DNA of 64,000 nucleotides, taken from Macrostomum lignano (Eukaryota). The stretch spans positions 186,001 to 250,000 of the forward strand of contig NIVC01000469.1 of assembly GCA_002269645.1 (NCBI GenBank), given 5' to 3'. Under the pieces are notes generated by a model. It was not told the origin of the DNA. It saw only the letters and a program-made list of their open reading frames with translations, and did no database searches. Both the position numbers and the translations under genes were made by a program. Positions 1 to 59,895 of this stretch are shown piece after piece. Positions within the stretch are counted from its first letter, which is position 1. Each line of letters begins with the position of its first letter.

Positions 1-213
1 GCCCAGGCCGGACAGGACCTCGGTGAGGATGAGCACGCACTCGGAGTCGGCCAGCATCGGTTCGGATTCGCCGGCGATATCAAAGTCGCACTGGTAGAAT
101 TCCCTATAGCGGCCGCGGGTCATGGCTGGCTGGTCCCGTCTGTACACCGGGCCGATCTGGTAGCGCCGCATCGACTGCAGCTTGTTCATGGCCACGTAGC
201 GGGCGAACGGCAC
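1..213 (-). CDS. HARS: Histidyl-tRNA synthetase, second exon (runs off window)
   Basis: Manual translation [48 protein letters not shown] = class II motif 2 of HisRS; CAG acceptor at 216-214; joins exon 1 in phase 0 (RYDLT|VPFARY). Confidence 0.95.
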
Positions 214-224
214 CTGCGGGGGTG

Positions 225-2025
225 CGGGGGAAGCGACTGGGGGGGTTATGGAAATAGGGGAAGAGACTGAGGGATTATGGGGATAAAAGAAGCGACTAAG
301 GGATTATGAGGATAGTGGAAGCGACTGAGGGATTATGGGGATAAGGGAAGAGACTGAAGCGATTAGGGGAATATGGAAAGCGACTGAAGGGTTTTTGGGG
401 AAGCGACTGGGGGATTATGGGGATAGGGAAGAGACTGAAGGGATCAATGGGGATAGAGAAAGAGACTGAAGGGATTATGGGGATTGGGGAAGAGACGGAA
501 GGGATCAATGGGGATAAGGGAAGAGACCGAAGGGATCAATGGGGATAAGGGAAGAGACCGAAGGGATCAATGGGGATAAGGGAAGAGACTGAAGGGATCA
601 ATGGGGATAAGGGAAGAGACCGAAGGGATCAATGGGGATAAGGGAAGAGACCGAAGGGATCAATGGGGATAAGGGAAGAGACCGAAGGGATCAATGGGGA
701 TAAGGGAAGAGAACGAAGGGATTAATGGGGATAGAGAAAGAGACTGAAGGGATCAATGGGGATTGGGAAGAGACTGAAGGGATCAATGGGGATAAGGGAA
801 GAGACCGAAGGGATCAATGGGGATAAGGGAAGAGACTGAAGGGATCAATGGGGATAAGGGAAGAGACCGAAGGGATCAATGGGGATAAGGGAAGAGACTG
901 AAGGGATCAATGGGGATAAGGGAAGAGACTGAAGGGATCAATGGGGATAAGGGAAGAGACCGAAGGGATCAATGGGGATAAGGGAAGAGAACGAAGGGAT
1001 TAATGGGGATAGAGAAAGAGACTGAAGGGATCAATGGGGATTGGGAAGAGACTGAAGGGATCAATGGGGATAAGGGAAGAGACCGAAGGGATCAATGGGG
1101 ATAAGGGAAGAGACTGAAGGGATCAATGGGGATAAGGGAAGAGACCGAAGGGATCAATGGGGATAAGGGAAGAGACTGAAGGGATCAATGGGGATAAGGG
1201 AAGAGAACGAAGGGATCAATGGGGATAGAGAAAGAGACTGAAGGGATTATGGGGATTGGGAAGAGACTGAAGGGATCAATGGGGATAAGGGAAGAGACCG
1301 AAGGGATCAATGGGGATAAGGGAAGAGACCGAAGGGATCAATGGGGATAAGGGAAGAGAACGAAGGGATTAATGGGGATAGAGAAAGAGACTGAAGGGAT
1401 CAATGGGGATTGGGAAGAGACTGAAGGGATCAATGGGGATAAGGGAAGAGACCGAAGGGATCAATGGGGATAAGGGAAGAGACTGAAGGGATCAATGGGG
1501 ATAAGGGAAGAGACCGAAGGGATCAATGGGGATAAGGGAAGAGACTGAAGGGATCAATGGGGATAAGGGAAGAGACTGAAGGGATCAATGGGGATAAGGG
1601 AAGAGACCGAAGGGATCAATGGGGATAAGGGAAGAGAACGAAGGGATTAATGGGGATAGAGAAAGAGACTGAAGGGATCAATGGGGATTGGGAAGAGACT
1701 GAAGGGATCAATGGGGATAAGGGAAGAGACCGAAGGGATCAATGGGGATAAGGGAAGAGACTGAAGGGATCAATGGGGATAAGGGAAGAGACCGAAGGGA
1801 TCAATGGGGATAAGGGAAGAGACTGAAGGGATCAATGGGGATAAGGGAAGAGAACGAAGGGATCAATGGGGATAGAGAAAGAGACTGAAGGGATTATGGG
1901 GATTGGGAAGAGACTGAAGGGATCAATGGGGATAAGGGAAGAGACCGAAGGGATCAATGGGGATAAGGGAAGAGACTGAAGGGATTATGGGGATAAGGGA
2001 AGAGACTAGGGGATTATGGGGAACC
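225..2025. repeat. 31-bp purine-rich minisatellite filling the HisRS intron
   Basis: Unit GAAGGGATCAATGGGGATAAGGGAAGAGACY repeated head to tail with variant units. Confidence 0.95.
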
Positions 2026-2047
2026 ATGAACCAAAGCAGTGACTCAC

Positions 2048-2389
2048 GGTGAGATCATAACGCAGACTCAGCAGTTCACCCCCCTGATCGCAGATATCAT
2101 AGATCAGTTTAGAGTCCTCTCCATATTTGCCGGTGAGCACCTCCTTTAGCTCAGCGCCGGGTGTCTCCAAGCACTCGGCGTCGTGACTTTTGAAAACGCT
2201 AACAATTTTTTGCAGCACATCCTCGCGAACGGACATCTGCACTGGCGGGCGATCGTGCATGCCTTTGGGCACTTTCAGCACCAGCTTCTGGCGCTGCTGA
2301 GGCCGCTGCTGCTGCTGCTTGGACTTGTCGCCATCATCAGGCTGTGCAACAACAGGAGCTTCACTAACAACTGCAGCATCGCTAGACAT
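2048..2389 (-). CDS. HARS: Histidyl-tRNA synthetase, first coding exon (from first in-frame ATG; frame stays open upstream to 2566)
   Basis: Translation [12 protein letters not shown]...[35 protein letters not shown] matches the eukaryotic HisRS N-terminal catalytic region; GTGAGT donor at 2047-2042; no WHEP domain seen. Confidence 0.95.
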
Positions 2390-2659
2390 GATTCTAATGC
2401 GCCCGGTTGATTGGTTGCTAGGAAACAGTATTGATTTGGTAATCTGTGACGCTGCAACCGCTAGTTGTCTGATTGATGCCGGCTTGTATAGCAGGCTGGA
2501 GGTCAGTGTTGTAGCTATAGTTGCATGCAATGTAGAGAAATAGCTCAATGCTTGCTTGTTATAATTTTAGAATGAGCTCTACTGGTGTGGTGGCCTGTGG
2601 GACATTAAACTAGCACTAGGGGCGCTGTGGGTTGAACATCATTGATAAAGATAGATCTA

Positions 2660-9132: not shown

Positions 9133-9733
9133 CCATAGACTATTGTAGCTTTCTAGTGTCAGATATATTAGGCCCGATAACAAATTCCTATGGTCACCGT
9201 GGGGATAAACTGCCAAAAGTTAAAGACAAATTTATATTTTCATAGGGGGGGGGGCTAACTTGTTTGCCCTAATTAATTAAACCCAAGCCAAGATCGAAAG
9301 AAAGTAAACTCAGAAAGCTTTGGCCTAGGCCAACATGACTTACGCCCTATTATAATTTAGACTTAGGATCATGCGCGTGCAGTGACGAAATAACGAGCGT
9401 ATTTTTAAATTTAACAAAATTTTACGCTTTTATAATTTATAAAGGTAAATAAATTAAACAAAACTTAGAATGAACTCTAAAAACACTTTCACTTGAAATT
9501 ATAACACACTTCCATTCAAAAATAATTTAAAGAAAAGACTCTCCTAACTTTACTTGACCGCTGTGAATGCATATCTATTTAACAAGTTATTTTTATACCT
9601 ACCAAAAATACATCAAGTTTTTATATACGCGCAGTGGGCTACAATTAAAAAAATCTCGGTTGTTTTCAGGAATTTAAAGCTGTAAAAGTTCGAGACGAAT
9701 TCTAATAAAGAATAATCATATACATATACTGCC

Positions 9734-10431
9734 CAAGGACGACTTAAGTAGAAGGACGGGAAACCTCGTTTCTTAGAAAATTTTTGAAGGCACTTTTTCC
9801 CGAAAAAATACACTACGGAGATAGGAAATTTTCATTTTTTCAGCACAAAAATTGCTATTACTTTTGATAGGAGGCAGATCCAGTGCTCATCTTTTGATAT
9901 GCTGTGCCTTTTTTATTGCTCTATCGATATTTATAAAGCTTTTAGTTCAGAAAATTAGGATTCTATGTCAATTTTTTATTCTACGTACATTTCCTGTATC
10001 TGAAAATCACAAAAATGCATGACACAGCTCCAATATTTGCTTTTATGAACCTATTTTATCATCTCTGTTACAAATATTTGCTAAACAGTCAGTTAAGAAT
10101 GATAAAATAGACTTCTAAAACCAAAGAGCCGAGCCGTGGCATTCTAATGTATTTCAATCACAAGACACGTGAAAATATACGGAGAATAAAAAATTTACAT
10201 AGAATCCTAATTTTCTGAACTAAAAGCTTTATAGATATCGATAGAGCAATAAAAAAGGCACAACATATCAAAAGATGAGCACTGGATCTGCCTCCTATCA
10301 AAAGTAATAGCAATTTTTGTGCTGAAAAAATGAAAATTTCCTATCTCCGTAGTGTATTTTTTCGGGAAAAAGTGCCTTCAAAAATTTTCTAAGAAACGAG
10401 GTTTCCCGTCCTTCTACTTAAGTCGTCCTTG
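9734..10431. mobile_element. 698-bp foldback MITE, ~255-bp TIRs, 8-bp TSD (P-superfamily-like termini)
   Basis: CAAGGACGACTTAAGTAGAAGG...CCTTCTACTTAAGTCGTCCTTG; TSD ATACTGCC at 9726-9733 and 10432-10439. Confidence 0.9.
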
Positions 10432-14012: not shown

Positions 14013-16689
14013 TTATTGGCGATCGCAACAATCGTAAAACTGTTCATAAACAAAACAGGTGCATTCGAAGCTGCAGTAATCACGATAGCGTTGCTGCAAA
14101 TCCGTAACTCCCAGGCTAGTGTCGTGGATTTCGTCGGCAAAATTTTTTATCATCTCGCCACACGAGTTAAGCTGCCTGACCCAAAGTTCTACCTCGGATG
14201 CAGAATTTTGTGATTGAGGCGCGGAGCCATCTGTGAGCCAATTAAACGGAGGAATTGAGCGAAGCCAATCAAGAAACGGTTTCTTGATCGAATCAAATAA
14301 ACTTATTTGCGTCTCATCCCTGGCGGGTGTGTAACTGTTCCTAAGTTTCTCGACATCAGTAATAGTTGTCTCGAAATCATCCTTGAAGCTCTGGACAGCG
14401 GATGAAAATTCGCCAATGGCCTGTCTGAACGAATCCAGCTTTTCCATGAATTCTGTGTGCTTATCCGGTGACGGGCTTTGTTGAAACTCCTGCAACAGCC
14501 TGAAGACTTCCCTGCTGTCCTTAGCATAAGTGGCAGCTGATAAGCGAAGTTGTACAACCGAGTTTGTTATCGCCTTTGTGTTAATTCCGGAGATCTCTAG
14601 CTTCGGAGCTACGTGGTTCCACCTTTCAGCTATTATTTCTAAATCATTCGGGTGTATACCTTTTTGCAGAAGCGATAGGGTTCTTGCGTCTTTGATGAGT
14701 TTAACGGCTTTTTTGTAAAAGAGTGTGATTTCAAAAGTTTTTTTTGCTCCGGCACTTTTAAAATCAGCAAGCTGCGCCTCTTCGGGCAGACTCCGAATCT
14801 TACTAAAGGTTTCGTTGAACTTTTTCGCAGAGAAAATTATCTTATATGTGACTCTCTCCCAAGAGGCGAATGACTTGCTTGTTGATCCAAATAACTGTCC
14901 TAAAGCGCTTTTCTCTGCGTTAAGGAAATCTAAGAACTTTTCACTCTCCGCCTTTCCCTTTAAAAGCTTCTCTGTGTGTAGGGGTGTTCGGGTCGGCCAT
15001 TTTTTCGGGGTTCGGGGTTTACCCCGAACCCGGTACCCCTACCCCGAACACCGAACCCCGTCCCGAACATTTCTTCTAACCCCGAACCCCGAACCCGGTA
15101 CCAAAACCCGACCCGACCCCGAACGTAACCCCGAACATTTTCACGCTTATTTTGGTCAATCATTTTAATAAATTCAGTTTTCAGTTTTCAATTTTTCAGT
15201 TTTCAGTTTTCAATTTCAGTTTTAAATTCAGTTTTATATATTGAGATGTGCCTTAACAGCTTCAACCACTTAGCCTTGTGGTTTTATTTCCCTTAGCTAC
15301 TCTACAACTAGGAAAATAAATATGAAACACTTCTTGCAATGGGATTGGGGTTGAGATGGAAGGAATACCAAGACCCAAGATCTAATAGTAAGATACATGA
15401 AAGTTCACAACTAAAATCAGGACCATTTCGTACCTATACTTACAACGAAATTGCTTTCATAGTAATATTACATCTATGAGTTTATTTAAGCTGCAAAAAT
15501 AGAGTACAATAAAATTAGATTATACCCTGTAGTGTAGATATCAGTAGAGATAGAACTAGAGCGATAAAGAGATAGCACAGATAAAACAATGATGCAATGA
15601 AACAGGAGAGTTAATCACAAATATATATTTATTTTTACTTTTGACTACAGTTAACAGTAAGTCAGTAGTGGTATAACAGAATTGCTATGTAAAAACTAAA
15701 GTGACGTCTTTACATAAAATTGTATGCTGATATGAGTAGGTAATCATTGTGATAATTGATTATTGGCGACTGATGCGTGGAGAATAATGGTGTATTTATA
15801 AATTTTAAGCTTCCTCATCCAATCCAGAAGTTCAGACCATGTTACACGTAGCACATGTAAAATTATTACTGAACGTAATTTTTTAAATCATCAACTGCAA
15901 GACTGAATGGGTCGAAAAACGACAATCGTTATTTACCAGAAAGTGTAAATGAATCCATGGTTCTATCTGCTATTTCCGTTTCAAATTGTATGTAAAATAT
16001 AACTTAAGTTGTACCTGAAACTCAATGCATATCTTTCGCATTGTGGATTTTGCATAAGGAGTAAAAAAAGTGCTTGAAAATACTCTTGAGAATGATAATT
16101 GTTCAAAACCCCGAAAACCCCGAAAACCCGGTGGCCAAACCCGACCCGAACCCCGAACCCGGTACCCCTACCCCGAACCCCGAACCCGACCCGGAACACC
16201 TACCCCGAACCCCGAACCCGGTACCAAAACCCGACCCGAAACCCGACCCGACCCCGAACCCCGAACACCCCTATCTGTGTGCTCGGTTTTGCTTTGCTGC
16301 TCCAGAAGCCAGATACAAATCTCTAGTTGGCTGCACAACAGACTGATCACCTGGTCTTTTGAAAGCTCCATTACTTTATTAAGTAGTTCGGCATTCTCAC
16401 CAAAGTCCGTTAGTCTGCTAAGAATATCATTGGCAATCTGTATGACTTTTCGAAGTTCCTGTTTAAATACGAAGAATTCCATTTTTTCAGGGACTCTATT
16501 TTCTTCCATTAGACCGTTGACCTGGATCTCAGCTACTGGCCTCAATATTTCACACAGGCTGGGTCTCACCTCAGTCAGCAGAAGTATGATTTTCAGTGCT
16601 GACGCGACAGCTTTAGCGTCGAATGACGGTTTGGGCTCCTCCGGCTTCGGCTCCGGCTCCGATGTCTTCTTGAACCATATATTGCCCAT
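14013..16689 (-). pseudogene. Intronless helical orphan gene A (457 aa after removing hAT insertion); paralog of 18640-19995
   Basis: ATG 16689 (MGNIWFKK...); deleting 14979-16273 plus one TSD joins ...KTEHT-EKLLKG... in frame; manual translation of 14970-14495 has no stop and runs into track ORF 14013-14495. Confidence 0.85.
14979..16273. mobile_element. 1295-bp non-autonomous hAT element (TAGGG termini)
   Basis: TIR TAGGGGTGTTCGGG / CCCGAACACCCCTA; TSD TCTGTGTG at 14971-14978 and 16274-16281; subterminal CCCGAACCC arrays at both ends; AT-rich noncoding interior. Confidence 0.95.
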
Positions 16690-18639
16690 AATATCTATTT
16701 TACTTTTGTTAGCAGCCTTGCAATGCAACTTGATATTGGTATGCCACAAAAGAGTCTGTGTTTGTTAAATAAGTAAGCATGAAACATCTCTCTCAACTTA
16801 TTTATAAGTTAAGAGAGATGTTATAAGTAAAATGAGTAACTATCCAATGTACAATGGCTTCTTTGAACGTCGCATAGCTCGTAGACGATTTTTTAACGTC
16901 TTATTCGTATCGCTACTATGGGTAGCACAATGCGCTTCGTGTATCGTTTTTTACGAGCTTAGCTACGATAAAAGTAATTAAGCCAATCAAACTCACGGCT
17001 AAAACTAAATCTCTGCGCGTGTTTTACAAGTCTGAATTACGAGTGTGCTCTGCTATCAACTCCCGCAATCAATCGTGAGCTTATGTTTTATGCATCGCAG
17101 CGGAATTTGATAAAATGCTGTGTAGGATGCAGTACGAGGCAGATCAAATGCAGTACGAGGTTCTTTACCAGTTACATGGTCAGTTTAAAGCAATTTTTTA
17201 AATATGAATACTCACGAGGAACAAATTAACGAAGATTTAGCTGAACATCCATGGTTTCAGGGGGACATGTGTGTTGCGGGCTCAAAGGGCGACAGTCGGA
17301 ACGCAGCTGACCTGCAGCTGACCCCTGAAACACAAAACCCAAATCAATTTCTGTACATGAATTCACAAACACATGACCGCTTGAAGAATCTAAACTGTAT
17401 GGCCTTTTTGGCCTCTCTGCAGAGATAATAGCCGGAACAATTATCGAAAAATGCTCGTAAGCAGCACTACTTTTAGTAGCACATAATCAAACAACAGGAG
17501 AGTCAATCGCCCCAATTTACGAGCTAAATATCTAAAAATGAACGATGCATTTGGTTCAATTTTGTTGACTAATAAACCAATAGTATATAGACTTTATATA
17601 GTGACTTTTTGAACTACATCTGCCGTGTCTGGAAGCTGGGCTGGGATCTGCACCCAAAAAACTTTTTTGCTTCATCTCTGCTCGGAAGTGCAACAAACCT
17701 ATTCGGTGAATTTTCTGTAGCTAACTGTGTACCCGGCGATTTGTCATTTTTAGTGTCGTAGAAATTGAGAAAATCACCCCGTTAGCTGGTAATTGATTCG
17801 CTGCAGAATGGCACGACCGATTTTTTAAGGAAATTTTGGGAAAGCTTTTAGCTAAAAAAATGAAGCCGAAAGTTGAGCTGCAGACAAAACGGTTAAGAAC
17901 CGACTGAACTGCAACAAGAGGCCACGGACATGTCAATAACGCAGAGTGCATCTTTCGAGCACAATCCAGAACCTGTTGTCCTTTTTATCTATCATCGTGA
18001 AAATTTTAATAGGAACCTTTGCGATCTTGATAGAATATTTTATTATAACTACTACTTATTAGTACTACTGTTTGATTAGGATGATTAGAAGTGGTTAGAT
18101 ATATTCTTATACAAGCGTAGCACTTGCAAAACGAATTTTTATCGAAGAAGCTGCAGCTAAAGTAAAATGAAAAGTAATAGCCTGGGAGCATAGTGTAGCT
18201 ACTTTTGAGCATTTGTTTTAAGCGGACAAGACGGAAAAGCATTTCAACTTCAAATTCAACGCATTTGAACAATAACAATAATCTAAAAAAGGTTAAATAT
18301 TACACACCTTGATTTTTAATTTATAATGGTACGTCGTAATTGAAGTATGATATAATTGGTTTCATCAAACCCAAACTTCTGTTTCTCTAAAATTTCTGGT
18401 GTGACACGCCAAAGCCGTCGAGAATTAGGAGGCTTTCCGCAACCTTAAGGGCTTCAATATCTGGTGTCTTGGTCTACCAGGTGGGTGCCTCTGTCTCTAT
18501 ACTAAGAGGTGGCAAAAGTTGAACTTCTAAAGCCAAACGGACCATGTTCTTTAAACACATACTCGTAAGAGGTTTCAAAACAGAATTAAGAATAATAAAA
18601 GTGTTCGAGTCAGGCTTCAAAACAGACGGACAAGGACAG

Positions 18640-19995
18640 TTAGTGCGCATCGAAGTACAAGTCACCACCTGAATAGTAACAACCTCTGTCGGTTGCGATG
18701 CTGCGATGCAACTCCTTGACTCCCTCGAAGCCAGTGCGAGCTTCTTCGGTAATTTCTATTATCCGCTCGAGAAAGCATCTTAGCAAATTATCGCAGACAA
18801 CAACCGGCTCTTCCCTAGTGACCATTTGACATACGAGTTTTCGTATTTTCGACCAAATCCATTTAAAAGGGTTGTTGGTAAAGCCTTCATCGTTTGTAGA
18901 ATCCCGAAGTTGGATTTTTCCGACTGCTTCGATCGTTTTCTCTGTATTTTCCCGCAAAGCATTGACTTCGGAGCACAATTCGTATCTCTGTTTCTTGAGC
19001 AGTTCGAGTTTATCTTTTAATTTTCTTTGCATCTCAGGCGTTGGAGCTTTCTGGAATTCTTTCATCAGATTGCAGACCTCTTGATTGTATTTTCCAACGG
19101 TGACAGATGCTGAACCCAGTTGTTTAATAGAGCTTGTTACTCTTTCGGAATGGATTTTCAAGCTTGGAAATGATTTTAGCCATTCGCTCGCGTGATTCCA
19201 TTCTTCGGTTAGTTTTTGGTATTGCAATTGCTGATGACTGCTCTGTATAATTGATAAGTTTCTTACAGTTTTTATTGTCTGCGGCGTTTGGATGCTGCTG
19301 TCACCAGCACATCCTGTAGTGCGCTGTGTCGTTCCGCAGCCCCATCCAGTCGCCGCGTCAAGCATAAATGTCGACTGGATCAAATCAGCCACATCTTTGC
19401 TCTCAAAGTCGCACAAGCGAGCCTCTTCCGTCAACTTCGGTAGATCCGCCAGGCAGCTGTTAAACTGATCCACAGATGACATAACCTGGAGTGCGGCTTT
19501 CTTCCAAAGCATGCATGTGAGCGTGTCTATGCCGAAATGAAAAAAGTTAAGCCACGTGTCAAGAAACTGAAGCAGCTCGTCGCCCGCTTCCTTTGCGTTG
19601 AGAAAAGTTTCTGTAAGTTTCTTTCTGTTTGTGTCTTCTAGAAGCCAGATGCAAATCTTCAGCTGACTGTTCAGTAGCTCGGCCAGCACTGTCTCGTTGG
19701 GGCAGCCGCTTTTCAGTTGTAAATTGATTTGTTCGAACTGCTCCAGTTTGTCATAAATATTTTTGGCAGTTTCCACGACTTCGACCAGTCGATTTTTGAA
19801 CATTACAAATTGATGCTTGGTGGAAATGTTGGTATTATTATTAAAATCCTGGATCAGCTCATCCATTGAAAGCGATACGAGAGGCTTCAGGCACTCGACC
19901 AGGCGGAATCTCACTTCGTCGAGCCGAATAATAACGCTTGCTGTCGGCCTGGTGGCCTTAGAAACGACCGACGGCTTCGATTGCGAGCTTCCCAT
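18640..19995 (-). CDS. Intronless 451-aa predicted alpha-helical/coiled-coil protein of unknown family (gene B), N-myristoylation motif
   Basis: Long non-repetitive ORF with real ATG; MGSSQS fits MGxxxS; shares motifs with gene A (SQLKICIWLLE/SQLEICIWLLE, EEWNH/ERWNH, EFQKAPTP/EFQQSPSP). Confidence 0.85.
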   Translation of the reverse strand: MGSSQSKPSVVSKATRPTASVIIRLDEVRFRLVECLKPLVSLSMDELIQDFNNNTNISTKHQFVMFKNRLVEVVETAKNIYDKLEQFEQINLQLKSGCPNETVLAELLNSQLKICIWLLEDTNRKKLTETFLNAKEAGDELLQFLDTWLNFFHFGIDTLTCMLWKKAALQVMSSVDQFNSCLADLPKLTEEARLCDFESKDVADLIQSTFMLDAATGWGCGTTQRTTGCAGDSSIQTPQTIKTVRNLSIIQSSHQQLQYQKLTEEWNHASEWLKSFPSLKIHSERVTSSIKQLGSASVTVGKYNQEVCNLMKEFQKAPTPEMQRKLKDKLELLKKQRYELCSEVNALRENTEKTIEAVGKIQLRDSTNDEGFTNNPFKWIWSKIRKLVCQMVTREEPVVVCDNLLRCFLERIIEITEEARTGFEGVKELHRSIATDRGCYYSGGDLYFDAH

Positions 19996-20539: not shown

Positions 20540-21705
20540 TCTGTCTGCCTGTCTTACTAGTCTGTCTTCATAATGCTGTCTGCCTGTCTTACTAGTCTGT
20601 CTTCATAATGCTGTCTGCCTGTCTTACTAGTCTGTCTTCATGACGCTGTCTGCCTGTCTAACTAGTCTGTCTTCATGATGCTGTCTGCCTGTCTAACTAG
20701 TCTGTCTTCATGATGCTGTCTGCCTGTCTAACTAGTCTGTCTTCATAATGCTGTCTGCCTGTCTTTACTAGTCTGTCTTCATAATGCTGTCTGCCTGTCT
20801 TTACTAGTCTGTCTTCATGATGCTGTCTGCCTGTCTTTACTAGTCTGTCTTCATGATACTGTCTGCCTGTCTTTACTAGTCTGTCTTCGTGATGCTGTCT
20901 GCCTGTCTTTACTAGTCTGTCTTCATGATGCTGTCTGCCTGTCTTTACTAGTCTGTCTTCATGATGCTGTCTGCCTGTCTTACTAGTCTGTCTTCATGAT
21001 GCTGTCTGCCTGTCTTACTAGTCTGTCTTCATGATGCTGTCTGCCTGTCTTACTAGTCTGTCTTCATGATGCTGTCTGCCTGTCTTACTAGTCTGTCTTC
21101 ATGATGCTGTCTGCCTGTCTTACTAGTCTGTCTTCATGACGCTGTCTGCCTGTCTAACTAGTCTGTCTTCATGATGCTGTCTGCCTGTCTAACTAGTCTG
21201 TCTTCATGATGCTGTCTGCCTGTCTAACTAGTCTGTCTTCATAATGCTGTCTGCCTGTCTTTACTAGTCTGTCTTCATAATGCTGTCTGCCTGTCTTTAC
21301 TAGTCTGTCTTCATGATGCTGTCTGCCTGTCTTTACTAGTCTGTCTTCATGATACTGTCTGCCTGTCTTTACTAGTCTGTCTTCGTGATGCTGTCTGCCT
21401 GTCTTTACTAGTCTGTCTTCATGATGCTGTCTGCCTGTCTTTACTAGTCTGTCTTCATGATGCTGTCTGCCTGTCTTACTAGTCTGTCTTCATGATGCTG
21501 TCTGCCTGTCTTACTAGTCTGTCTTCATGATGCTGTCTGCCTGTCTTACTAGTCTGTCTTCATGATGCTGTCTGCCTGTCTTACTAGTCTGTCTTCATGA
21601 TGCTGTCTGCCTGTCTTACTAGTCTGTTTTCATGATGCTGTCTGCCTGTCTTACTAGTCTGTCTTCATGATGCTGTCTGCCTGTCTTACTAGTCTGTCTT
21701 CATGA
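20540..21705. repeat. 35-36-bp minisatellite (~33 units)
   Basis: Unit GCTGTCTGCCTGTCTTACTAGTCTGTCTTCATGAT; the variant pattern recurs at ~500-bp spacing. Confidence 0.95.
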
Positions 21706-21707
21706 TA

Positions 21708-22115
21708 CGAGAGATATGAGAGGAGAGAGGAGTGGGAGAGATATGAGAGGGGAGAGGAGTGGGAGAGATATGAGAGGGGAGAGGAGTGGGAGAGAGATAT
21801 GAGAGGGGAGAGGAGTGGGAGAGAGATATGAGAGGGGAGAGGAGTGGGAGAGATATGAGAGGGGAGAGGAGTGGGAGAGATATGAGAGGGGAGAGGAGTG
21901 GGAGAGATATGAGAGGGGAGAGGAGTGGGAGAGAGATATGAGAGGGGAGAGGAGTGGGAGAGATATGAGAGGGGAGAGGAGTGGGAGAGATATGAGAGGG
22001 TAGAGGAGTGGGAGAGATATGAGAGGGGAGAGGAGTGGGAGAGATATGAGAGGGGAGAGGAGTGGGAGAGATATGAGAGGGGAGAGGAGTGGGAGAGAGA
22101 TATGAGAGGGAGATG
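21708..22115. repeat. 27-29-bp GA-rich tandem repeat
   Basis: Unit GAGATATGAGAGGGGAGAGGAGTGGGA. Confidence 0.9.
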
Positions 22116-27642: not shown

Positions 27643-28265
27643 AAGCTCCCAGAAACCGAAGACTGCCTCATTGGCCGAGCCAGAAGGCAGCCAATAGCCA
27701 ATAAGCAGCCCGTACCAAAAGAAGCCGCCATTTAGTGGCAAAGAATAGTCAATCCAGAGGCAAAAACCAACGCAGAAATCAAGCAGAAATTCACTGACTG
27801 CTCTAAAGATTCTTCACTAATCGGTGAGTGCGGGTGGGCATTGAACACATTTTTTGCGGCTTTGAGTTTGAGATTCTGTCCCAGTTTATCTGGAATGCTG
27901 GAGTACATTCGGGGTTTCTATGGCGATCCCCCCATGTTGTCTGTCAAAGAGCACCACGTCTTCTTTTTTCAATTTTCCGCTTTGAAATCTGCCAGGTGAC
28001 GCGACGTGTCAAGAAAGCTGCACGAGTTTACCGTTGACGCTCGCTTGATGAGGCTAAAAGGGAATTGATGCTGGGAATGTCTGCGCCTGCGTGTGCGTCA
28101 GCTTGGCGTTTGCAAATAAGGATGTTTCCCCAAAGCTTTTCTGTCTGTGCCGCGTACTTTAACAGTAGGAAATATCAATAGAAACTTAGTGCTGAGATCT
28201 GAAATGAGATAAAAATTTGTTGCGGACAACTTTGCAAGGCCACTTAGCAGTGGTATGCGGCGGTA

Positions 28266-28855
28266 GATGGCGGATAGTAGATAGCGAATAGTAGATAGCG
28301 GATAGTAGATAGCGGATAGTAGATAGCGGATAGTAGATTGCGGATAGTAGATAGCGGATAGTAGATAGCGGATAGTAGATAGCGGATAGTAGATAGCGGA
28401 TAGTAGATAGCGGATAGTAGATAGCGGAAAGTAGATAGCGAATAGTAGATAGCGGATAGTAGATAGCGGATAGTAGATAGCGGATAGTAGATAGCGGATA
28501 GTAGATAGCGGATAGTAGATAGCGGATAGTAGATAGCGGATAGTAGATAGCGGATAGTAGATAGCGGATAGTAGATAGCGGATAGTAGATAGCGGATAGT
28601 AGATATCGGATAGTAGATAGCGGATAGTAGATGGCGGATAGTAGATAGCGGATAGTAGATAGCGGATAGTAGATGGCGGATAGTAGATGGCGGATAGTAG
28701 ATAGCGGATAGTAGATAGCGGATTGTAGATAGCAGATAGTAGATAGCGGATAGTAGATAGCGAATAGTAGATAGCGGATAGTAGATAGCGGATAGTAGAT
28801 GGCGGATAGTAGATAGCGGATAGTAGATAGTGGATAGTAGATAGCGGATAGTAGA
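28266..28855. repeat. 14-bp minisatellite
   Basis: Unit GATAGTAGATAGCG. Confidence 0.95.
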
Positions 28856-29335
28856 CAGCAGACATATTTAACGGGCTAAGTTTTTCATTCATGTATATTG
28901 CTATGTGAAAAGTTACATTGGTCGGTTAGTCAGATTAGCACAGGTATACAACTTCACCGGACACAGTCAAAGATCAAAGAGTGTTCCCATCATTGCAACC
29001 GTAAACGGCGCATCTATCTAATTTCTCATAAGGCTTTTCCGACGAGAAGTTCAGTTTACAAAGAAACGGGGTAAACAGAAACAGACAGACTGGCTAACAG
29101 CTAGCTAGCTTGTGATTACGTAACACGAGTTGTACATGAGGGCCTGGGGATAGGGGGGGAGGAGCTCGCGGCGAGTCAGGCAGAAGATAATTTAGAGGGC
29201 TGAGGGGGACAGACAGTAAATAACGGGTTGTGCTGGGTCAGATTGCAGCTGGGGCCGCTGCGCTTTGAAGGGGGTGGCTGAGTATTGCTCTGAGCTCTGC
29301 TCTGGCAAATTGTTAATGACTGCGTAGCAGGTTGG

Positions 29336-30060
<725 letters not shown>

Positions 30061-30684
30061 TGTATTCACACAGAATGCGGCTGCAATTCAGACAAATGTG
30101 AAGCCAATTAAGTATCCAGACAGCCGGAGTCCAGCTTTACTAGAGCGACAGGCCGGCAGGCTCTGCATCTACCCCCCACTCACTCAATTCATCCTTGAGA
30201 ACAATTAACAAAGTTAGCGAAGCGAGAAAGTTGCTGCCCACCGGTTGCTGGACACAACACAAGAGGCCTCCTCTAGAAGACAGAAATTTGCAGAGTGATC
30301 TGGGAAAAATCCTGCAACAGTTTGATGGGGGGGGGGCAGAAGCCTAATTCCGAATTCGGGTTGGGGCGGCTCAAGATGTCCTGCGGCCCATCATTGTTTA
30401 GTTTTAAAAAGGCCAACACAACTGGGTGTTGGAAACTTCGCACTTCGTTTGGCTCGCGCTATCTTCTTCTCTGACTTGTATAGTGCTGGCGTCCTGAATG
30501 TTTGCGCCCAGCTTCAGTTTATGCCTCATCATCAATCACTGCAACGCGAGATTTTTGGAAAATTGTAAAAATCTCTGAGGGAAAACTTCAGTTTGGAACT
30601 TCTGACAGGGAAGGCGCCTGCAGGGCGGATAAATAAACAGACGGCGAAGAGGGAAGCAGATGGCTACAGTGGGGCGACACGGGG

Positions 30685-32300
<1,616 letters not shown>

Positions 32301-34239
32301 AGAGAGTGAAGACTTGATAGAATTAATTTTTTACGTAAAACAACGACTGTACTGGTAACAAATTTTCAAACTATCATTTGCGGTAAAGTTTTAATATTAA
32401 TTTTAATTAAATTTTTGTTCTTCAAAACTTTCACTTTCACAAACTTTCACTCTTGCAATTGTGCCCATTTCGCTGACTCATGCACACGCTCACACAGGGT
32501 GTACAGCGGCCCTGACTGTCTAATCCTCAGGCATGTACACTCTCTGTGCTTTGGGGGCTGCCCATCATGGCTGTGAGTCGCACGACAGCCCCTTGACCAA
32601 CTTCCGTTAACAAGCCCTTAATTGGTGTGGCCGCGAATCTAACCAGGATCTGTGGCGCAAGAGATCTCCTCACCTGGGGGGACCGAATTTCCATCGGGAA
32701 TGGAAACCGGGGGAGCATTGAAAAGAGAGGAGGTATGGAGAATGAAGCTGGGCAGAGTGATGCAGCTAATCGGTGCCCCACAGACATCTGTTTTCTACTG
32801 TCGCTCTGAGGCGCCAGTCTGCTTTGCTGTCTTTGCTGTCACCTGCGACCTGCGGCAGCAGCCCCGCTCAGTCATAATTGCTTTTCTCACCGCACGGCCC
32901 CACCTGGCTATTTATAATTCTGTATTCAGACCCAGCCGGCAGAATGCTCTGCAATGAGATGGTCAATTGTCTCTCGACTCTCTACGCGTTTCTCGCGGGG
33001 GCCATGCAAACCGCGACCCGAGAGTTGGCGCGCGTGCGCTCTTTCAAAGAGAAGAAAAGAACTTGAAGAGGCACTTTGCTGCTTCTACCTGCTGCTGGCT
33101 GGCAGGAAAAGATAATGCTCCTTCAATTGCGGGCTGGGGGGGTTTCTTTTGTGTGCTTTTGTTGAGAATTTCAGTCTCAGGCGGGGAGGCCCTGGGCTGT
33201 ATAAAATTGGCTGTAGGCAGTATTGGAATGCTCGGAGCCCGGCCATTTCGAATTGGACGGATTTCATTTCTGTGAAAATATTTTTGGCATTCGCTATTAA
33301 AGGTGAGTTTATTCTTTTACAACGGAGGCAAGAGAGCTTGCACAAGGGATTCGCCTAGAGGTCCTGAGTTCGAGCTGTTTTATTGCTAAATTATAGTTTT
33401 TGTGGTTTATTTATTTTATTGCAAGATATTTTCTAGAAAAATCAAAGAACCCAGCTCTCTCGTCCACTTCTACTGAAGCCGTCCCTGAGTTCGAGTTCAA
33501 AATGTGATTTATCCTCCAACGTACCCAATATCACTGTAGACCTCCCATATGCTCAAGTTTTACGACCAAATCTGGACCCAGAATCCCCGCATAGATTAGT
33601 TTCTGGTAGACAAATATCCAGCACAGAGTCTTGACCGGCCACTTCTCGGCGGAATGCCGCGGATTACGTAATAATATATTCAAATTTTTTCTTGCTGCCC
33701 AGCTTCAGCCCTCCATCATCGCTAATTCTCGCTTAGTTTGAGGTCAATAACCTTGGGGGGCTCTAACTGCCTTCTCCGCCTTCTCTCTGCTGTTTTGCTG
33801 CAAGACTGAGAGGCGGGCAAGACCGTTCAATCAAATAAGACAGAAAACTTGAAGCAGTTTTTATCTGCTATTTCGGTTTTAATAATTAATGAGTCTCTTG
33901 GCTTGACGGAGAGGGAACTAGGCTAGGGTGGTTTGCTTGGTTTTCGTTGAATTGAGACGCGAATATAACAAATCTTGCGGATTGATTTGGGATGGGTGTG
34001 GGAGAATACGGGTGATGGAGTGCGAGGGAATTGATGAGCAAAGGCAGACAAACCAGGAGGAGTGACTGAAAAAGCGTGTTAAAGAGGCAGTATGATTTGA
34101 CAGGATGGATAGCGAGATATTCGAAGAAAATTATGGTTATGAAGAGGAGCAAAAGTGAGAGGGGAGGGGATAAAGGAAAGAGCCAGGAGGATAACAGAGA
34201 GAATTGGTGAAGATAGTGATGAGGAAGAGACGTGATGAG

Positions 34240-34700
34240 AGAGAGCAGGGTTGATGGAGAGGGCATGAGGGAGAGGTATGAGGGAGAGGGGATGAGGGAG
34301 AGGGGATGAGGGAGAGGGGATGAGGGAGAGGGGATGAATGAGAGGGGATGAGAGAGAGGGGTGAGGGAGAGAGAGGATGAGGGAGAGGGGATGAGGGAGA
34401 GGGGATGAGGGAGAGGGGATGAGGGAGAGGGGATGAGGGAGAGGGGATGAGGGAGAGGGGATGAGGGAGAAGGGATGAGAGAGAGGGGATGAGGGAGAAG
34501 GGATGAGGGAGAGGGGATGAGGGAGAGGGGATGAGGGAGAGGGGATGAGGGAGAGGGGATGAGGGAGAGGGGATGAGGGAGAAGGGATGAGAGAGAGGGG
34601 ATGAGGGAGAGGGGATGAGGGAGAGGGGATGAGGGAGAGGGGTGAGGGAGAGGGGGGTGAGCGAGAGAGAGGATGAGCGAGAGGGGATGAGGGTGAACCA
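34240..34700. repeat. 14-bp GA-rich tandem repeat
   Basis: Unit GATGAGGGAGAGGG. Confidence 0.9.
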
Positions 34701-35496
34701 GGAAAGAGCCGAGACCAGGGCAGCTTGCAGGAGATAAAACAGAGCCCAGCGCCCAGAGACACAGCAAACTGAAATCAGACAAGTCAAAGCTGGCTCCTGG
34801 AACCGCTGCAGAGGAGCCGGGAGTTTCCGCATTGATTCAGCCAGGCATGGAACTGGCGGAAGTCATCAGCGACTGCCATCTACTATGTGGGGATTATTAA
34901 ACATTTATGCCCCCAGTCGATACCCAACTGTATCTCCCGCTCGCATATATCTGCTTTGTTCATCTGATATTTCCGAGCTGTGCCACAAGGCGAAGAAGGA
35001 GTTGATTGACGGGGGGTGTTGGGGCGGTGGCAGCCCACCGACTGGCAGATTGACCAGACAGTCAGTCTTAATCCCTGCAGTTGCGCTGTGCAGTCAAGAT
35101 CGCTAGCTACAGATTAACAAGTCGTCCTCCCCATCTGCAGCTCTCAATCTCTCCTGGGCTGTAAAGGAACGCCAACCACCCCTCGGCAACCCGGCAAGTC
35201 CCGCGGAAATTCCAGAGTAGAGAATGGAGCAACCCGCTAGGGAGGCTGGCCAGCATTCCGAATCTGCTCATTTCGGATTCGACCGCGCGGGAGCAGTGTG
35301 CCGGTTCGAAATCCCCGGGGAGACGACCCGAGTCTGAGCACCCCAGCTTGGATTGAGAGATAGCCCCGAGTCTGAAGAGCTGCATGCATTTTTTCATTTT
35401 CCAACCATGCTTAAAAACTAATGCGATGCCCTATCCGGGAGTTGACCAATAACTGTATTCCCAACCCATTCTGACTGCAGATTCGACACAACTAAC

Positions 35497-36755: not shown

Positions 36756-39060
36756 GGCCAGACTAAAAAGACTTGTAAATTTATTACACTTCAAATTTAT
36801 GTGAATTTTGATAGGAAACCTGCGTATTGGAAAGACATTGACCCAAGGACTTCCGTAGTTTAAGGACGCAAAATTGAAAAAATGGCGAGGCTTATTAAAT
36901 CCACGAAGCTGGAACACAGTCAAGGACAACCAAAAGTTAAATTTATAAATCAAAAATTAAAGTTCTAGAGGTTCTTGCTAATTTATATATAGCTCCTGTC
37001 ATAAGGACCACTCAGGCGGGAAGCTACGAGCATATTTTTACAGTCTGACTTTTCCGCGACGCTATGACCTACTAGTCAAATCTACCAGTGTAAACTGAGT
37101 TTTTTATATACTTGCCGATAATTAAATTTATATTTAACAGTGTGTAATAGAATAGTGTGTAACGACGTTAATCTTATGTTCGCGAAATATTCAATTGCTG
37201 CTTGATATTTCAACATCAAAATAGTAAATAAATGTAAAATACAACCAATATCATCAACGTAGTTTTGTTGCAAAGAAAGGCATAAAGTAAGGCGGCATTT
37301 ATTGTTTTTTATTACACATGTTATTATATAATACGCGAGGAATTGCGATAAATAAAACCACATATATGTACTAGTTAATCCGTAATATTTAATACTGAGG
37401 AAGCCGCGGCATTAAGTGTTAATCGTAATAAAAATATTCTTGGCCGTAGCCGAACAGAGAGAGAGACACTCGCCGTAATTTAATCCGCAAAAAAGTGTTA
37501 AAACAGAATCTGCTGCTCAATAGTGCTTCAAGCGCTTTTTCGTATTTATAAGCAATAAATGTAAAATTAAAATTTTATCTAAGCGACCAGCGATTTGGAA
37601 AGGTAAAATTTAAGCGAACAAACACGCAGGCTAAACAGGAAAGCAGGTTATACATATGTTTTTGTTATATAAATGTGTGGTTGCTTTAGCATCCGGACAA
37701 ATCCATCGTTTTTAAAAAATACAAAACGAACTAACGTACTGCTGCATAAATAAATCCGGAAAATAAAAGAAAATGTACGTCTGTAACAAATCGCGAGGAC
37801 CTGCATTAGTTTCTAGCCTTAAAAAAACTTTAATAGCTTCCAGATTTAGCGGTTGAAATAAATTTACTTTGAATGTGCAACTAATTTCAATTGTAACGAG
37901 TCTACAAGGCGAGACACCAAGCGCCAAAACACGAACCAAATTTGAATATGCCAACTTATAACAAAAATACAAAAGAAGTCGCTGCACAACAAACCCCAAA
38001 CCTGAAAGAGTGGAACTGTTAAGCTCCCTCAACCGAAATAATTTTTGCTACGCAGACATTATAATTACTGATCATATAGCAAAATGAAACAAGAAAAATC
38101 ATATAGTCATAACGAATCAATATAGTCGAATCGAATACAAACTGAAATTTCACCCGCAGAGAGCAAATTATTTAAAATTAAAATTAAAATTAAAATAAAA
38201 AAATTTCCGAGCCATGCGTAAAATTGGTAATTACTATACAAGCATCCAGTTAGCTTAACCGAAAGTACATGTTTATAAAAATTTTATGGACTGTACACCA
38301 TTGCCAGCGAGTAACTTTTATTTGACTACTGTGAGTAACGTAGTAGGGATTTGAAAAGAAAATTAGAAGCGTGTGGCTAGAAAAATCTAATTAAAAATCT
38401 CATTAAAAGCTAGAACTTTATATGCAAGTCTTGTAGGCCAGCAGTATTTGCGGATTTGGATGATCATTTGGTACACGACAACAGAAACTTATTTCACATG
38501 TATTAATAACTTCTTAAAACAATATCTAATTTTATTTATTGGCAAATTATTTTGATTTGATTAACCAATAAATATAACATACCTACCTCGTTAAACATGA
38601 GCCAAAAGGAAATCAGTACAAATTATTTTATATATCACAAGATATATATATCACTACTAGACTAGAGGCTTTGTGCGGCATAGAGATATGAAGTTAAGTA
38701 AATTTGAATAGTTGCAAAACACGTCTGTGGATAGCCGCCTAGGTGTTTCCGTATTGTCTTAATTACTTTATTGCCTTTGAGTCACTGGCCGTGCCAGTCA
38801 ACAAATCGAGCCTTATGTTACTTTGCAATAAAAACCTCGATTTCTCTGAAGAGTGAAGTTTCGATGCTTTCTATCAAAAAGTCAGACACAGCTGGTAGAC
38901 CCCAAGCATAGCACTATACAATATAAATATGCTCTTACAGGGTGTACAGTGGGCCTGACTAGAACGTTTTTTCAAAAAATAGGCATTACTTACGACTTTC
39001 CATCAGCAACTTTTGAGAATAGGAAAGGCCATTGTAGCCCACAAAAAGCGAGTTAGTCAT

Positions 39061-59895
<20,835 letters not shown>

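What the first reader, a model, noticed from the sequence alone, without database searches (positions are those of the whole stretch)
18640..19995. Orphan family of intronless, putatively myristoylated all-helical proteins
Seen: gene B (MGSSQS...) and gene A (MGNIWF...) are collinear but strongly diverged paralogs. Shared blocks are FKNRLVEVVETAKNI/FKQELRKVIQIANDI, SQL(K/E)ICIWLLE, EEA(R/Q)L(C/A)DF, WNH, a heptad-rich coiled-coil stretch, an aromatic amphipathic patch (PFKWIWSKI/PFLDWLRSIPPFNWL) and Cys/Tyr-rich C-termini. I recognise no enzyme motif. Inference: Gly2 lipid anchor + helical bundle + amphipathic patch + rapid divergence + tandem duplication is the profile of membrane-acting defence or effector proteins (e.g. 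MLKL/HeLo-like, apolipoprotein L-like or alpha-pore-forming folds). No homology to these is demonstrated.
Basis: partly seen in the sequence, partly recalled or inferred. Interest (0 to 1): 0.7.

Follow-up and report, generated by a model that had tools for sequence, protein, structure and literature searches.

The report
Flatworm-only helical protein family, function unknown
Two neighbouring intronless genes of the flatworm Macrostomum lignano belong to a small, fast-changing family of all-helical proteins found nowhere else; one branch carries a textbook lipid-anchor signal, but nothing supports the proposed pore-forming or defence role.

Summary
The window is Macrostomum lignano assembly Mlig_3_7, contig NIVC01000469.1. 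Gene B (18640-19995, minus strand) is an intact 451-codon ORF. Gene A is a collinear paralog with 28% identity. In this assembly A is split by a 1295-bp non-autonomous hAT-like transposon, and the empty site is in frame. A second locus carries three more intact copies (B', A', B''). Searches of 5.8 and 1.84 billion proteins found only the two annotated A-type "hypothetical proteins" of the same species. B-type genes are unannotated. Pfam, PDB profile searches and Foldseek gave no significant match.

AlphaFold (3-sequence alignment, pLDDT 67) predicts two long helical bundles joined by a disordered linker that only B-type has. There is no signal peptide, transmembrane segment or hydrophobic hairpin. 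Only B-type (MGSSQSKP) fits the N-myristoylation consensus; A-type does not.

The ORFs are kept open by selection, but constraint is loose (dN/dS 0.6-0.8). B's coding sequence differs from B' more than its flanks do, in clusters, which suggests gene conversion.

My reading is an orphan family of cytosolic helical-bundle proteins whose B-type members are probably myristoyl-anchored to membranes. The MLKL/ApoL/pore-former idea failed every test I could run. Interest is modest.

The parts
18640..19995 (-). Gene B: intact single-exon ORF, 451 aa plus stop; the B-type member. It is not present in public protein sets.
   Evidence: ORF list. No self-hit. Paralogs B' (92% aa) and B'' (77% aa) at locus L002.
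19975..19995 (-). Codons for MGSSQSK, an N-myristoylation consensus (Gly2, Ser6, Lys7).
   Evidence: PROSITE PS00008-type pattern is matched by B, B' and B'' but not by A or A'. An N-terminal Src64B myristoylation tag is reported to target the plasma membrane in M. lignano embryos (PMC12633465).
19396..19938 (-). B residues ~20-200: N-terminal long-helix bundle. It holds the most conserved block of the family, LLxSQLxICxWLL (residues 107-119).
   Evidence: AlphaFold with a 3-sequence alignment gives block pLDDT mostly 81-93, lower (58-71) around residues 91-110, 151-160 and 181-200. Invariant columns.
19264..19374 (-). B residues 208-244: Gly/Thr/Cys-rich insert found only in B-type, predicted disordered. 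It is part of the zone where B and B' differ most.
   Evidence: Gap in A-type. pLDDT 24-31 across residues 211-240. 26 of 49 B/B' differences lie in nt 450-780 of the CDS.
18691..19263 (-). B residues ~245-435: C-terminal helical region with the conserved EEWNH and EFQKAP(S/T)P motifs and the 45-residue 'heptad' helix 320-364.
   Evidence: AlphaFold helices with pLDDT 71-87 for residues 261-360 apart from one block at 63, and 69-74 for 401-430. Invariant columns.
18823..18876 (-). B residues 374-391: aromatic amphipathic patch NNPFKWIWSKIRKLVCQM. Trp379 is invariant between B, A and A' (it is Arg in B''); Ser382 is invariant in all five copies.
   Evidence: Alignments. Hydrophobic moment 0.53. 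Modelled as a helix with low confidence, pLDDT 35-44.
16274..16689 (-). Gene A, 5' part (codons 1-138 plus 2 nt), ending with the first copy of the 8-bp target-site duplication CACACAGA (16274-16281).
   Evidence: Identical to residues 1-139 of GenBank protein BOX15_Mlig018364g1 (P0003).
14979..16273 (.). 1295-bp non-autonomous DNA transposon inserted in gene A. Perfect 14-bp terminal inverted repeats TAGGGGTGTTCGGG, subterminal inverted repeats of ~115 bp, no ORF longer than 72 codons. It looks hAT-like.
   Evidence: Read-through from the 5' part gives a premature stop (ORF 16168-16749).
14013..14978 (-). Second copy of the target-site duplication (14971-14978), then gene A's 3' part (14970..14013, including the stop).
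   Evidence: Joining the flanks gives a 457-codon open frame equal to P0003.
20541..22110 (.). Two adjacent minisatellites (35-bp unit x33, 27-bp unit x14.6) starting about 550 bp upstream of gene B. The same arrangement is present at the second locus.
   Evidence: Collinearity with L002 4589-6228.

Best explanation
A and B are members of a protein-coding gene family restricted, as far as public data show, to Macrostomum lignano. At least five intronless copies lie in two paralogous or homeologous loci, each with a B-A gene pair.

Shown or predicted: the proteins are about 450 aa and have no signal peptide or transmembrane segment, so they should stay in the cytosol. AlphaFold predicts two bundles of long amphipathic helices.

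Inferred mechanism: B-type proteins lose Met1 and are N-myristoylated on Gly2 (MGSSQSKP, with Lys7, Lys13 and Arg16 nearby). This should tether them weakly and reversibly to the cytosolic face of a membrane. The conserved Trp-rich amphipathic segment (residues ~374-391) may add a second interfacial contact, and the helical bundles would act as a protein-binding scaffold or spacer. A-type proteins have lost the NMT consensus; they may act unanchored or together with their B neighbour. No part of the proposed action has been tested, and the biological process is unknown. The family evolves under loose constraint and exchanges sequence between copies.
For: - Real coding genes: five open frames of 447-457 codons. 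Every length difference between copies leaves both frames open. The chance that the frame survives the observed number of random substitutions is <5e-5 for A/A' and 0.0025 for B/B''. A-B dN/dS is 0.2-0.3, with dS saturated.
- A-type models in GenBank come from a purely transcript-based annotation (PMC5730564).
- Orphan status: no hit for B in 5.8e9 proteins. Exhaustive HMMER over 1.84e9 representatives finds only the A-type cluster. The one other hit, P0002, is noise (hhalign probability 1.3%). The profile search adds nothing.
- Fold: all-helical in both AlphaFold runs. With three sequences, blocks in residues 31-150 mostly reach pLDDT 81-93. The best-superposing Foldseek matches are generic designed four-helix bundles, TM 0.6-0.76 on the target.
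- Location: no signal peptide or transmembrane segment.
- Lipidation: B-type fits the NMT consensus, and a Src64B-type myristoylation tag is among the tags reported to work across the species tested, M. lignano included.
- Pairing: the B-A adjacency is conserved at both loci.
Against: - Myristoylation is only a motif match, and A-type fails it.
- No expression data for B-type: it is absent from the transcript-based GenBank annotation. That annotation also dropped transcripts overlapping repeats, so the absence is ambiguous.
- Pairwise dN/dS of 0.6-0.8 is not significantly below 1.
- GC3 of 0.44-0.51 is closer to the intergenic GC content (0.38-0.45) than to the GC3 of neighbouring genes (0.55-0.84).
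- One copy is transposon-disrupted.
- The AlphaFold model rests on three sequences. pTM is 0.45, and the aromatic patch and the domain arrangement are poorly determined.
- 'Scaffold' is a default reading for a helical protein without motifs, not a demonstrated function.
Confidence: 0.5

Rival explanations
1. Membrane-acting defence or effector proteins. After a trigger, the helical bundle opens and inserts into or disrupts a membrane, in the manner of MLKL/HeLo, apolipoprotein L or alpha-pore-formers. The myristate would pre-position the protein.
For: - Gly2 in all five copies and a strong NMT motif in B-type.
- Long amphipathic helices and an aromatic patch.
- Tandem and segmental duplication.
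- Lineage restriction.
- The B coding sequence differs from B' 2.7-fold more than its flanks do (p = 4.5e-5).
Against: - No sequence or profile similarity to HeLo, MLKL, ApoL, colicin or Bcl-2 families at E<=1.
- No such structure is named in the 50 best-listed Foldseek PDB rows, and no hit has E<0.001.
- No hydrophobic hairpin or N-terminal hydrophobic helix (maximum KD19 1.0-1.4).
- dN/dS is below 1.
- Synonymous sites are also elevated over the flanks (odds ratio 4.1), and the differences are clustered and mosaic with B''. This points to gene conversion rather than selection on the protein.
- The strong A/A' divergence is regional and includes non-coding DNA.
Confidence: 0.1
2. Reproduction-related proteins, for example testis or sperm membrane-skeleton components. 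They would evolve fast under sexual selection, as described for many genus-specific genes in Macrostomum.
For: In Macrostomum, reproduction-related genes show higher protein divergence and are harder to find across species (PMC7336406, abstract). This family is undetectable outside M. lignano and has high dN/dS. This reading is compatible with the structural account in the best explanation.
Against: There is no expression or localisation evidence. The gene identifiers Mlig018364 and Mlig030117 were not found in the supplementary tables held for five M. lignano papers; those files may be truncated. The argument rests only on a prior.
Confidence: 0.2
3. Evolutionarily young or decaying ORFs with little or no function, possibly derived from a mobile element or virus (for example a domesticated myristoylated Gag-like protein) and now drifting.
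For: - Intronless, in a genome averaging 4.9 introns per gene (PMC5730564).
- GC3 close to intergenic GC content.
- dN/dS of 0.6-0.8 is not significantly below 1.
- One copy is broken by a transposon.
- B-type is unannotated.
- B'' sits next to a LINE and a 17-mer array, with only ~35 nt of shared upstream sequence.
Against: - All five frames are open despite up to 24% nucleotide divergence, and length differences are in frame.
- About 28% amino-acid identity is retained between A and B with saturated dS.
- AlphaFold is confident on a packed bundle from only three sequences.
- No reverse transcriptase, integrase, CCHC knuckle or capsid-like hit in the proteins.
- The two loci share more than 10 kb of ordinary synteny rather than element-like termini.
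- A-type is transcribed according to the annotation method.
Confidence: 0.15

Closest known systems
Src-type N-terminal myristoylation signals (such as the Src64B membrane tag)
   Same: B-type starts MGSSQSKP: Gly2, small residues, Ser6, Lys7-Pro8, then Lys13 and Arg16. This fits the NMT consensus. From my own knowledge it closely resembles the N-terminus of Src kinases. A Src64B tag is reported to give plasma-membrane targeting in M. lignano embryos (PMC12633465).
   Different: Only the first ~8 residues are alike. There is no SH3, SH2 or kinase domain. The basic cluster is weaker and there is no nearby Cys for palmitate. A-type members do not fit the consensus.
Long up-and-down four-helix bundles (designed maquette proteins 6z0c, 5vjs, 8d9o; by analogy apolipophorin-III-like exchangeable lipid-binding bundles)
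   Same: The only well-superposing Foldseek matches: TM 0.6-0.76 on the target, rmsd 2.8-6.7 A over ~210 columns. The helices are amphipathic.
   Different: E-values are 0.13-0.6 and identity is 11-12%. This is a generic topology and not evidence of homology. The apolipophorin analogy comes from memory and was not tested. These proteins carry two such regions plus a lipid-anchor motif.
MLKL four-helix-bundle / fungal HeLo domains, apolipoprotein L, colicin- and Bcl-2-type alpha-pore-formers
   Same: All-alpha proteins that act on membranes. In some lineages the families expand and diverge quickly.
   Different: No profile hit, no fold hit, no hydrophobic hairpin or N-terminal membrane-inserting helix, and no signal peptide (ApoL has one).
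GenBank hypothetical proteins BOX15_Mlig018364g1 and BOX15_Mlig030117g1 (M. lignano)
   Same: These are family members. The first is gene A of this window with the transposon treated as an intron. The second is its paralog A' at the other locus.
   Different: They carry no function. UniRef's automatic name for the first ('DHC_N1 domain-containing') was not reproduced by Pfam at E<=1. The B-type subfamily has no public model.

Membership tests
MLKL N-terminal bundle / HeLo-like domain | Profile similarity to the HeLo or MLKL N-terminal families | tested here: not met
   hmmscan of all five members against Pfam-A at E<=1 lists no such family.
MLKL N-terminal bundle / HeLo-like domain | Fold match to solved 4HB/HeLo structures | tested here: not met
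   Foldseek against the PDB gives no hit with E<0.001, and no row among the 50 listed is described as one. Caveat: model pLDDT is 67.
Apolipoprotein L / colicin / Bcl-2-type alpha-pore-formers | Central hydrophobic helical hairpin buried in an amphipathic bundle | tested here: not met
   The highest 19-residue Kyte-Doolittle mean is 0.95-1.41 in the five proteins, with no pair of hydrophobic helices.
Apolipoprotein L / colicin / Bcl-2-type alpha-pore-formers | Sequence, profile or fold similarity | tested here: not met
   Pfam, PDB profile searches and Foldseek against PDB and BFVD.
N-myristoylated proteins (NMT substrates) | Gly at position 2 of the precursor | tested here: met
   All five copies start MG.
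N-myristoylated proteins (NMT substrates) | Consensus G-{EDRKHPFYW}-x-x-[STAGCN]-{P} after Met1 | tested here: inconclusive
   Met by B, B' and B'' (GSSQSK). Not met by A (GNIWFK) or A' (GNHLYS).
N-myristoylated proteins (NMT substrates) | Covalent myristate on the protein | not testable with these tools
   Needs metabolic labelling or mass spectrometry.
Coiled-coil proteins | Extended heptad register that forms an intermolecular coiled coil | tested here: inconclusive
   Residues 320-364 form one long helix. Only sub-threshold matches to the c-Jun zipper or a myosin rod (E 0.02-0.9). The monomer model places this helix in an intramolecular bundle. No dedicated coiled-coil predictor was run.
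Retroelement Gag-like domesticated genes | Capsid-like fold or CCHC zinc knuckle | tested here: not met
   No Gag, capsid or zf-CCHC family at E<=1. No capsid structure is named in the listed Foldseek hits. The Cys-rich tails lack a C-x2-C-x4-H-x4-C pattern (read).
hAT-superfamily non-autonomous transposon (the insert in gene A) | 8-bp target-site duplication and short terminal inverted repeats starting (T/C)A(A/G)NG | tested here: met
   Target duplication CACACAGA on both sides. Perfect 14-bp repeats TAGGGGTGTTCGGG; 2 matches in the window against 0 expected. The hAT consensus is from my own knowledge.
hAT-superfamily non-autonomous transposon (the insert in gene A) | Related autonomous element with a hAT transposase | not tested
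The whole genome was not searchable here.

The most novel reading that the evidence does not exclude
The conserved B-A gene pair encodes a flatworm-specific two-component system of a fold class not yet described. A myristoyl-anchored helical-bundle protein (B) and an unanchored partner (A) would unfurl on a trigger to remodel or breach membranes, in immunity or in sperm-egg or sperm-partner conflict. The diversity of the linker region would be maintained by gene conversion among copies.
Probability: 0.08. Interest if true: 0.7.

Novelty: new variant of a known kind. Interest (0 to 1): 0.3.

Why it matters
If the reading is right, this is one more taxonomically restricted gene family in a flatworm genome that is full of them. 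It matters mainly as annotation. It shows that the B-type subfamily (at least three intact genes) is missing from the public gene set. It shows that one GenBank 'intron' is really a transposon insertion, probably polymorphic between copies. It also shows that the two paralogous loci are a mosaic of young (~1.4% diverged) and old (12-41% diverged) segments, with signs of gene conversion.

As a sequence family it has no known relatives. It would become interesting if expression or localisation work tied it to a flatworm-specific process such as germline, adhesion or immunity. M. lignano has transgenesis, RNAi and tested membrane tags, so this can be checked at the bench.

Tried and rejected
- Word-indexed homolog search with B found nothing. 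The same with A' found only the two M. lignano proteins. The five-sequence profile added nothing.
- Exhaustive phmmer gave one extra hit, P0002. I rejected it as a repeat-inflated artefact: hhalign probability 1.3%, and its Pfam 'hits' are scattered noise.
- The Pfam sub-threshold hit DUF4698 (E 0.0034, 16.8 bits against a 28.6 cut-off) appears in one member only, so I rejected it.
- The whole-protein PDB profile search gave influenza HA2 long-helix matches at E ~0.01. They disappeared when the C-terminal half was searched as its own 4-sequence profile, so I rejected them as helix/heptad noise. The KaiA match (E 0.018) covers only ~50 residues and was also rejected.
- Single-sequence AlphaFold was too poor to use (pLDDT 44.7).
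- Foldseek against BFVD returned only long-helix proteins such as tape-measure proteins, with rmsd above 20 A. Rejected.
- Internal duplication of the N- and C-terminal halves: hhalign probability 14%, not supported.
- B'' as a processed retrocopy: homology covers the ORF plus ~35 nt upstream and ~75 nt downstream, but there is no poly(A) tract or target duplication, so this is not supported.
- Gene identifiers were searched in the full text and in the supplements of five M. lignano papers without result.
- My first guess that the ORFs at 56.4-57.9 kb are an M13 peptidase was not confirmed by Pfam.
Full report
**Where the window comes from.** The window is 100% identical to Macrostomum lignano assembly Mlig_3_7 (GCA_002269645.1), contig NIVC01000469.1, in reverse orientation. 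Locus L001 positions 1-22677 equal window 26689-4013. [quoted passage not shown] The rest of the window fits an animal genome: a histidyl-tRNA synthetase exon, GC-rich filamin-repeat exons and many micro- and minisatellites.

**The observation.**
- Gene B is exactly the ORF at 18640-19995 on the minus strand: 451 codons from ATG to TAA, beginning MGSSQSKP.
- Gene A starts at 16689 (MGNIWF...) on the same strand. tblastn of B against the window finds A in two pieces, E 1.5e-19 and 4e-11.
A and B are collinear over their whole length at 28% identity.

**Gene A is interrupted.**
- The reading frame runs into a 1295-bp insert (14979-16273). The insert has perfect 14-bp terminal inverted repeats TAGGGGTGTTCGGG: two matches in the window against zero expected.
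- It also has subterminal inverted repeats of about 115 bp and no ORF above 72 codons. It is flanked by an 8-bp direct duplication, CACACAGA.
- These are the hallmarks of a non-autonomous hAT-type DNA transposon. The hAT consensus is from my own knowledge.
- Joining the two flanks with one copy of the duplication restores a 457-codon open frame.
- That product is identical to GenBank protein BOX15_Mlig018364g1 (P0003). Its gene model spans 2677 bp, which is the CDS plus 1303 bp. So the public annotation treats the transposon plus one duplication copy as an intron.
- None of the nine equivalent junction placements has GT-AG ends (read).
- The annotation was built from transcripts mapped to the genome. 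The simplest reading is that the transcript comes from a transposon-free copy and that the copy in this contig is disrupted. This is an inference.

**Family and distribution.**
- B has no hit, not even itself, among 5.8 billion proteins, and no gene with its product is on record.
- An exhaustive HMMER scan of 1.84 billion cluster representatives finds one real relative, P0001 (E 7e-41). This is BOX15_Mlig030117g1 of M. lignano. It also finds one artefact, P0002 (hhalign probability 1.3%).
- P0001 lies on contig NIVC01001953.1 (locus L002). That locus carries B' (448 aa, 92% identical to B), A' (P0001, 450 aa, 56% identical to A), a LINE with endonuclease and reverse-transcriptase domains, and B'' (447 aa, 77% identical to B).
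- All five frames are open. A profile of the five finds nothing further.
- The family is so far specific to this species, with at least five genes, and the three B-type genes are unannotated.
- The GenBank gene set excluded transcripts that overlap repeat annotations. Absence of B-type models therefore does not show absence of transcription.

**Are they real genes?**
- Pairwise dN/dS is 0.60 (B/B'), 0.75 (B/B'') and 0.78 (A/A'). None is significantly below 1 on its own.
- A/B comparisons give 0.2-0.3 with saturated dS.
- The frames could not have stayed open by chance. With the observed number of substitutions placed at random, the frame survives in <5e-5 of trials for A/A' and 0.0025 for B/B''.
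- Every length difference between copies leaves both frames open.
- A-type models derive from transcripts, and the CDS of A' is a single exon.
- GC3 is 0.44-0.51. That is nearer the intergenic GC content (0.38-0.45) than the GC3 of the neighbouring genes (0.55-0.84). This fits young or weakly expressed genes.

**How the copies diverge.**
- The two loci are collinear. From window 26048 down to about 17250, divergence in the non-repetitive DNA flanking gene B is 0.9-1.6%.
- From about 17250 onward, identity first drops to 92-94%. From about 16950 it falls to 59-88% through gene A, and to about 50% or lower just beyond the stop codon.
- So the strong A/A' divergence (dS 0.34) is a regional feature of an older duplicate segment. 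It is not specific to the protein.
- Within the young segment, the B coding sequence stands out. It differs from B' at 3.65% of sites against about 1.4% in its flanks (odds ratio 2.7, p = 4.5e-5).
- Synonymous sites are raised as well (odds ratio 4.1, p = 4e-5).
- The 49 differences are clustered (index of dispersion 3.2, permutation p = 5e-5). 26 of them fall in nt 450-780, and they are mosaic with respect to B''.
- This pattern is what gene conversion between diverged paralogs produces. Diversifying selection on the linker region may add to it, but the data do not require it.

**The proteins.**
- No Pfam family reaches significance in any member. UniRef's automatic name for P0003, 'DHC_N1 domain-containing', was not reproduced.
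- Profile searches of the PDB, with the whole protein and with each half, give only weak hits (E >= 0.012) on long helices: HA2, KaiA, the c-Jun zipper and a myosin rod. The HA2 hits are not stable to a change of alignment.
- AlphaFold on B alone is poor (pLDDT 44.7). With A and A' in the alignment it reaches pLDDT 67.
- That model has an N-terminal region of long helices (residues ~20-200), mostly at pLDDT 81-93 with dips to 58-71.
- Next comes a disordered, B-specific Gly/Thr/Cys-rich insert (208-244).
- The C-terminal part holds a second set of long helices (~245-364 and 397-435, pLDDT roughly 63-87) and a low-confidence segment with the aromatic patch (374-391). The tail is unstructured.
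- Foldseek finds nothing at E<0.001 in the PDB or BFVD. The only well-superposing hits are designed four-helix bundles, TM 0.6-0.76 on the target.
- The two halves are not detectably related to each other.
- There is no signal peptide, no transmembrane segment and no hydrophobic hairpin. The maximum 19-residue hydropathy is 0.95-1.41.

**The lipid anchor.**
- All five proteins start Met-Gly. B, B' and B'' (GSSQSK) satisfy the N-myristoylation consensus, with the favoured Ser and Lys.
- A (GNIWFK) and A' (GNHLYS) carry a bulky aromatic where a small residue is required, so they fail it.
- A Src64B-type myristoylation tag is among the three tags reported to work across all species tested, including M. 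lignano embryos (PMC12633465). The machinery and a ready assay therefore exist.
- Myristoylation of B-type is a reasonable prediction. For A-type it is doubtful.

**Most likely explanation.** This is a lineage-restricted family of cytosolic proteins built from two helical bundles.
- B-type members are probably tethered to the cytosolic face of membranes by an N-terminal myristate and a few basic residues. The conserved Trp-containing amphipathic segment may help.
- The bundles would serve as a scaffold or spacer.
- The conserved B-A adjacency suggests that the two types are used together.
- Shown here: coding status, family limits, predicted secondary structure, absence of secretion or transmembrane signals, and the motif match.
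- Inferred: lipidation, membrane association, scaffold role and pairing.

**Rival explanations.**
- The defence/pore-former reading failed every defining feature that could be tested, although it cannot be excluded.
- A reproduction-related role is plausible, because such genes evolve fast in this genus. It has no direct support.
- A decaying or element-derived ORF is argued against by frame conservation and by ordinary synteny between the loci.

**Novelty.** As a sequence family it has no known relative, and the B-type subfamily is not in public gene sets. As a kind of thing, an orphan helical protein with a standard lipid-anchor motif, it is not unusual. Orphan families are common in this genome.

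Noticed in passing
window 14979-16273: A 1295-bp non-autonomous hAT-like transposon sits inside gene A. It has 14-bp perfect inverted repeats, an 8-bp target duplication and ~115-bp subterminal inverted repeats. GenBank model BOX15_Mlig018364g1 treats it as an intron, although no junction placement has GT-AG ends. The perfect repeats and duplication suggest a recent insertion.
   Followed up: yes
window ~16950-17250, compared with L002 ~9700-10000: There is a sharp change in identity between the two paralogous loci. Upstream, including gene B, they are 96-100% identical. Identity first dips to 92-94% (17244-16946) and is 59-88% from about 16950 through gene A. The loci are therefore a mosaic of young and old duplicated segments, or were partly homogenised.
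   Followed up: partly
window 18643-19995 compared with L002 6774-8117: The coding sequence of B is more diverged from B' than the flanking non-coding DNA is (3.65% against ~1.4%), at synonymous sites too. The differences are clustered and mosaic with B''. Gene conversion among paralogs is likely.
   Followed up: yes
window 20541-22110; L002 4589-6228: Two adjacent minisatellites (35-bp unit x33, 27-bp unit x14.6) start about 550 bp upstream of gene B. They are conserved in position at the second locus. They create long spurious ORFs in several frames.
   Followed up: partly
L002 14588-17395 (minus strand) and 17700-17990: A LINE-type ORF of 935 aa (endonuclease plus reverse transcriptase) and an array of about 17 copies of a 17-bp unit lie between A' and B''. 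B'' shares only ~35 nt of upstream sequence with B, so it may lack the original promoter.
   Followed up: partly
window 39000-51000 and 58300-58970 (minus strand): Filamin/ABP280-repeat exons are very GC-rich (GC3 0.75-0.84) and are interspersed with long microsatellite arrays. This contrasts with the AT-richer region that holds genes A and B.
   Followed up: partly
window 2006-2548 (minus strand): An exon encodes the N-terminal part of a histidyl-tRNA synthetase (Pfam tRNA-synt_His, E 1e-8).
   Followed up: partly
window 56442-57942 (minus strand): Three overlapping or adjacent ORFs of 150-220 codons have no Pfam match for the two tested. I had guessed an M13-type peptidase from memory, and that was not confirmed.
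   Followed up: partly
P0003 (public record of gene A): UniRef names it 'DHC_N1 domain-containing protein'. No dynein heavy-chain family appears at E<=1 in the Pfam scan, so the name looks like a helix-driven false positive.
   Followed up: yes
window 1-2000, 28000-31000, 33900-34800, 44000-44800, 46400-47900, 51700-52600, 53300-54600, 55000-55900: Long simple-sequence and minisatellite arrays with extreme GC or AT skew produce many long artefactual ORFs in the six-frame list.
   Followed up: no
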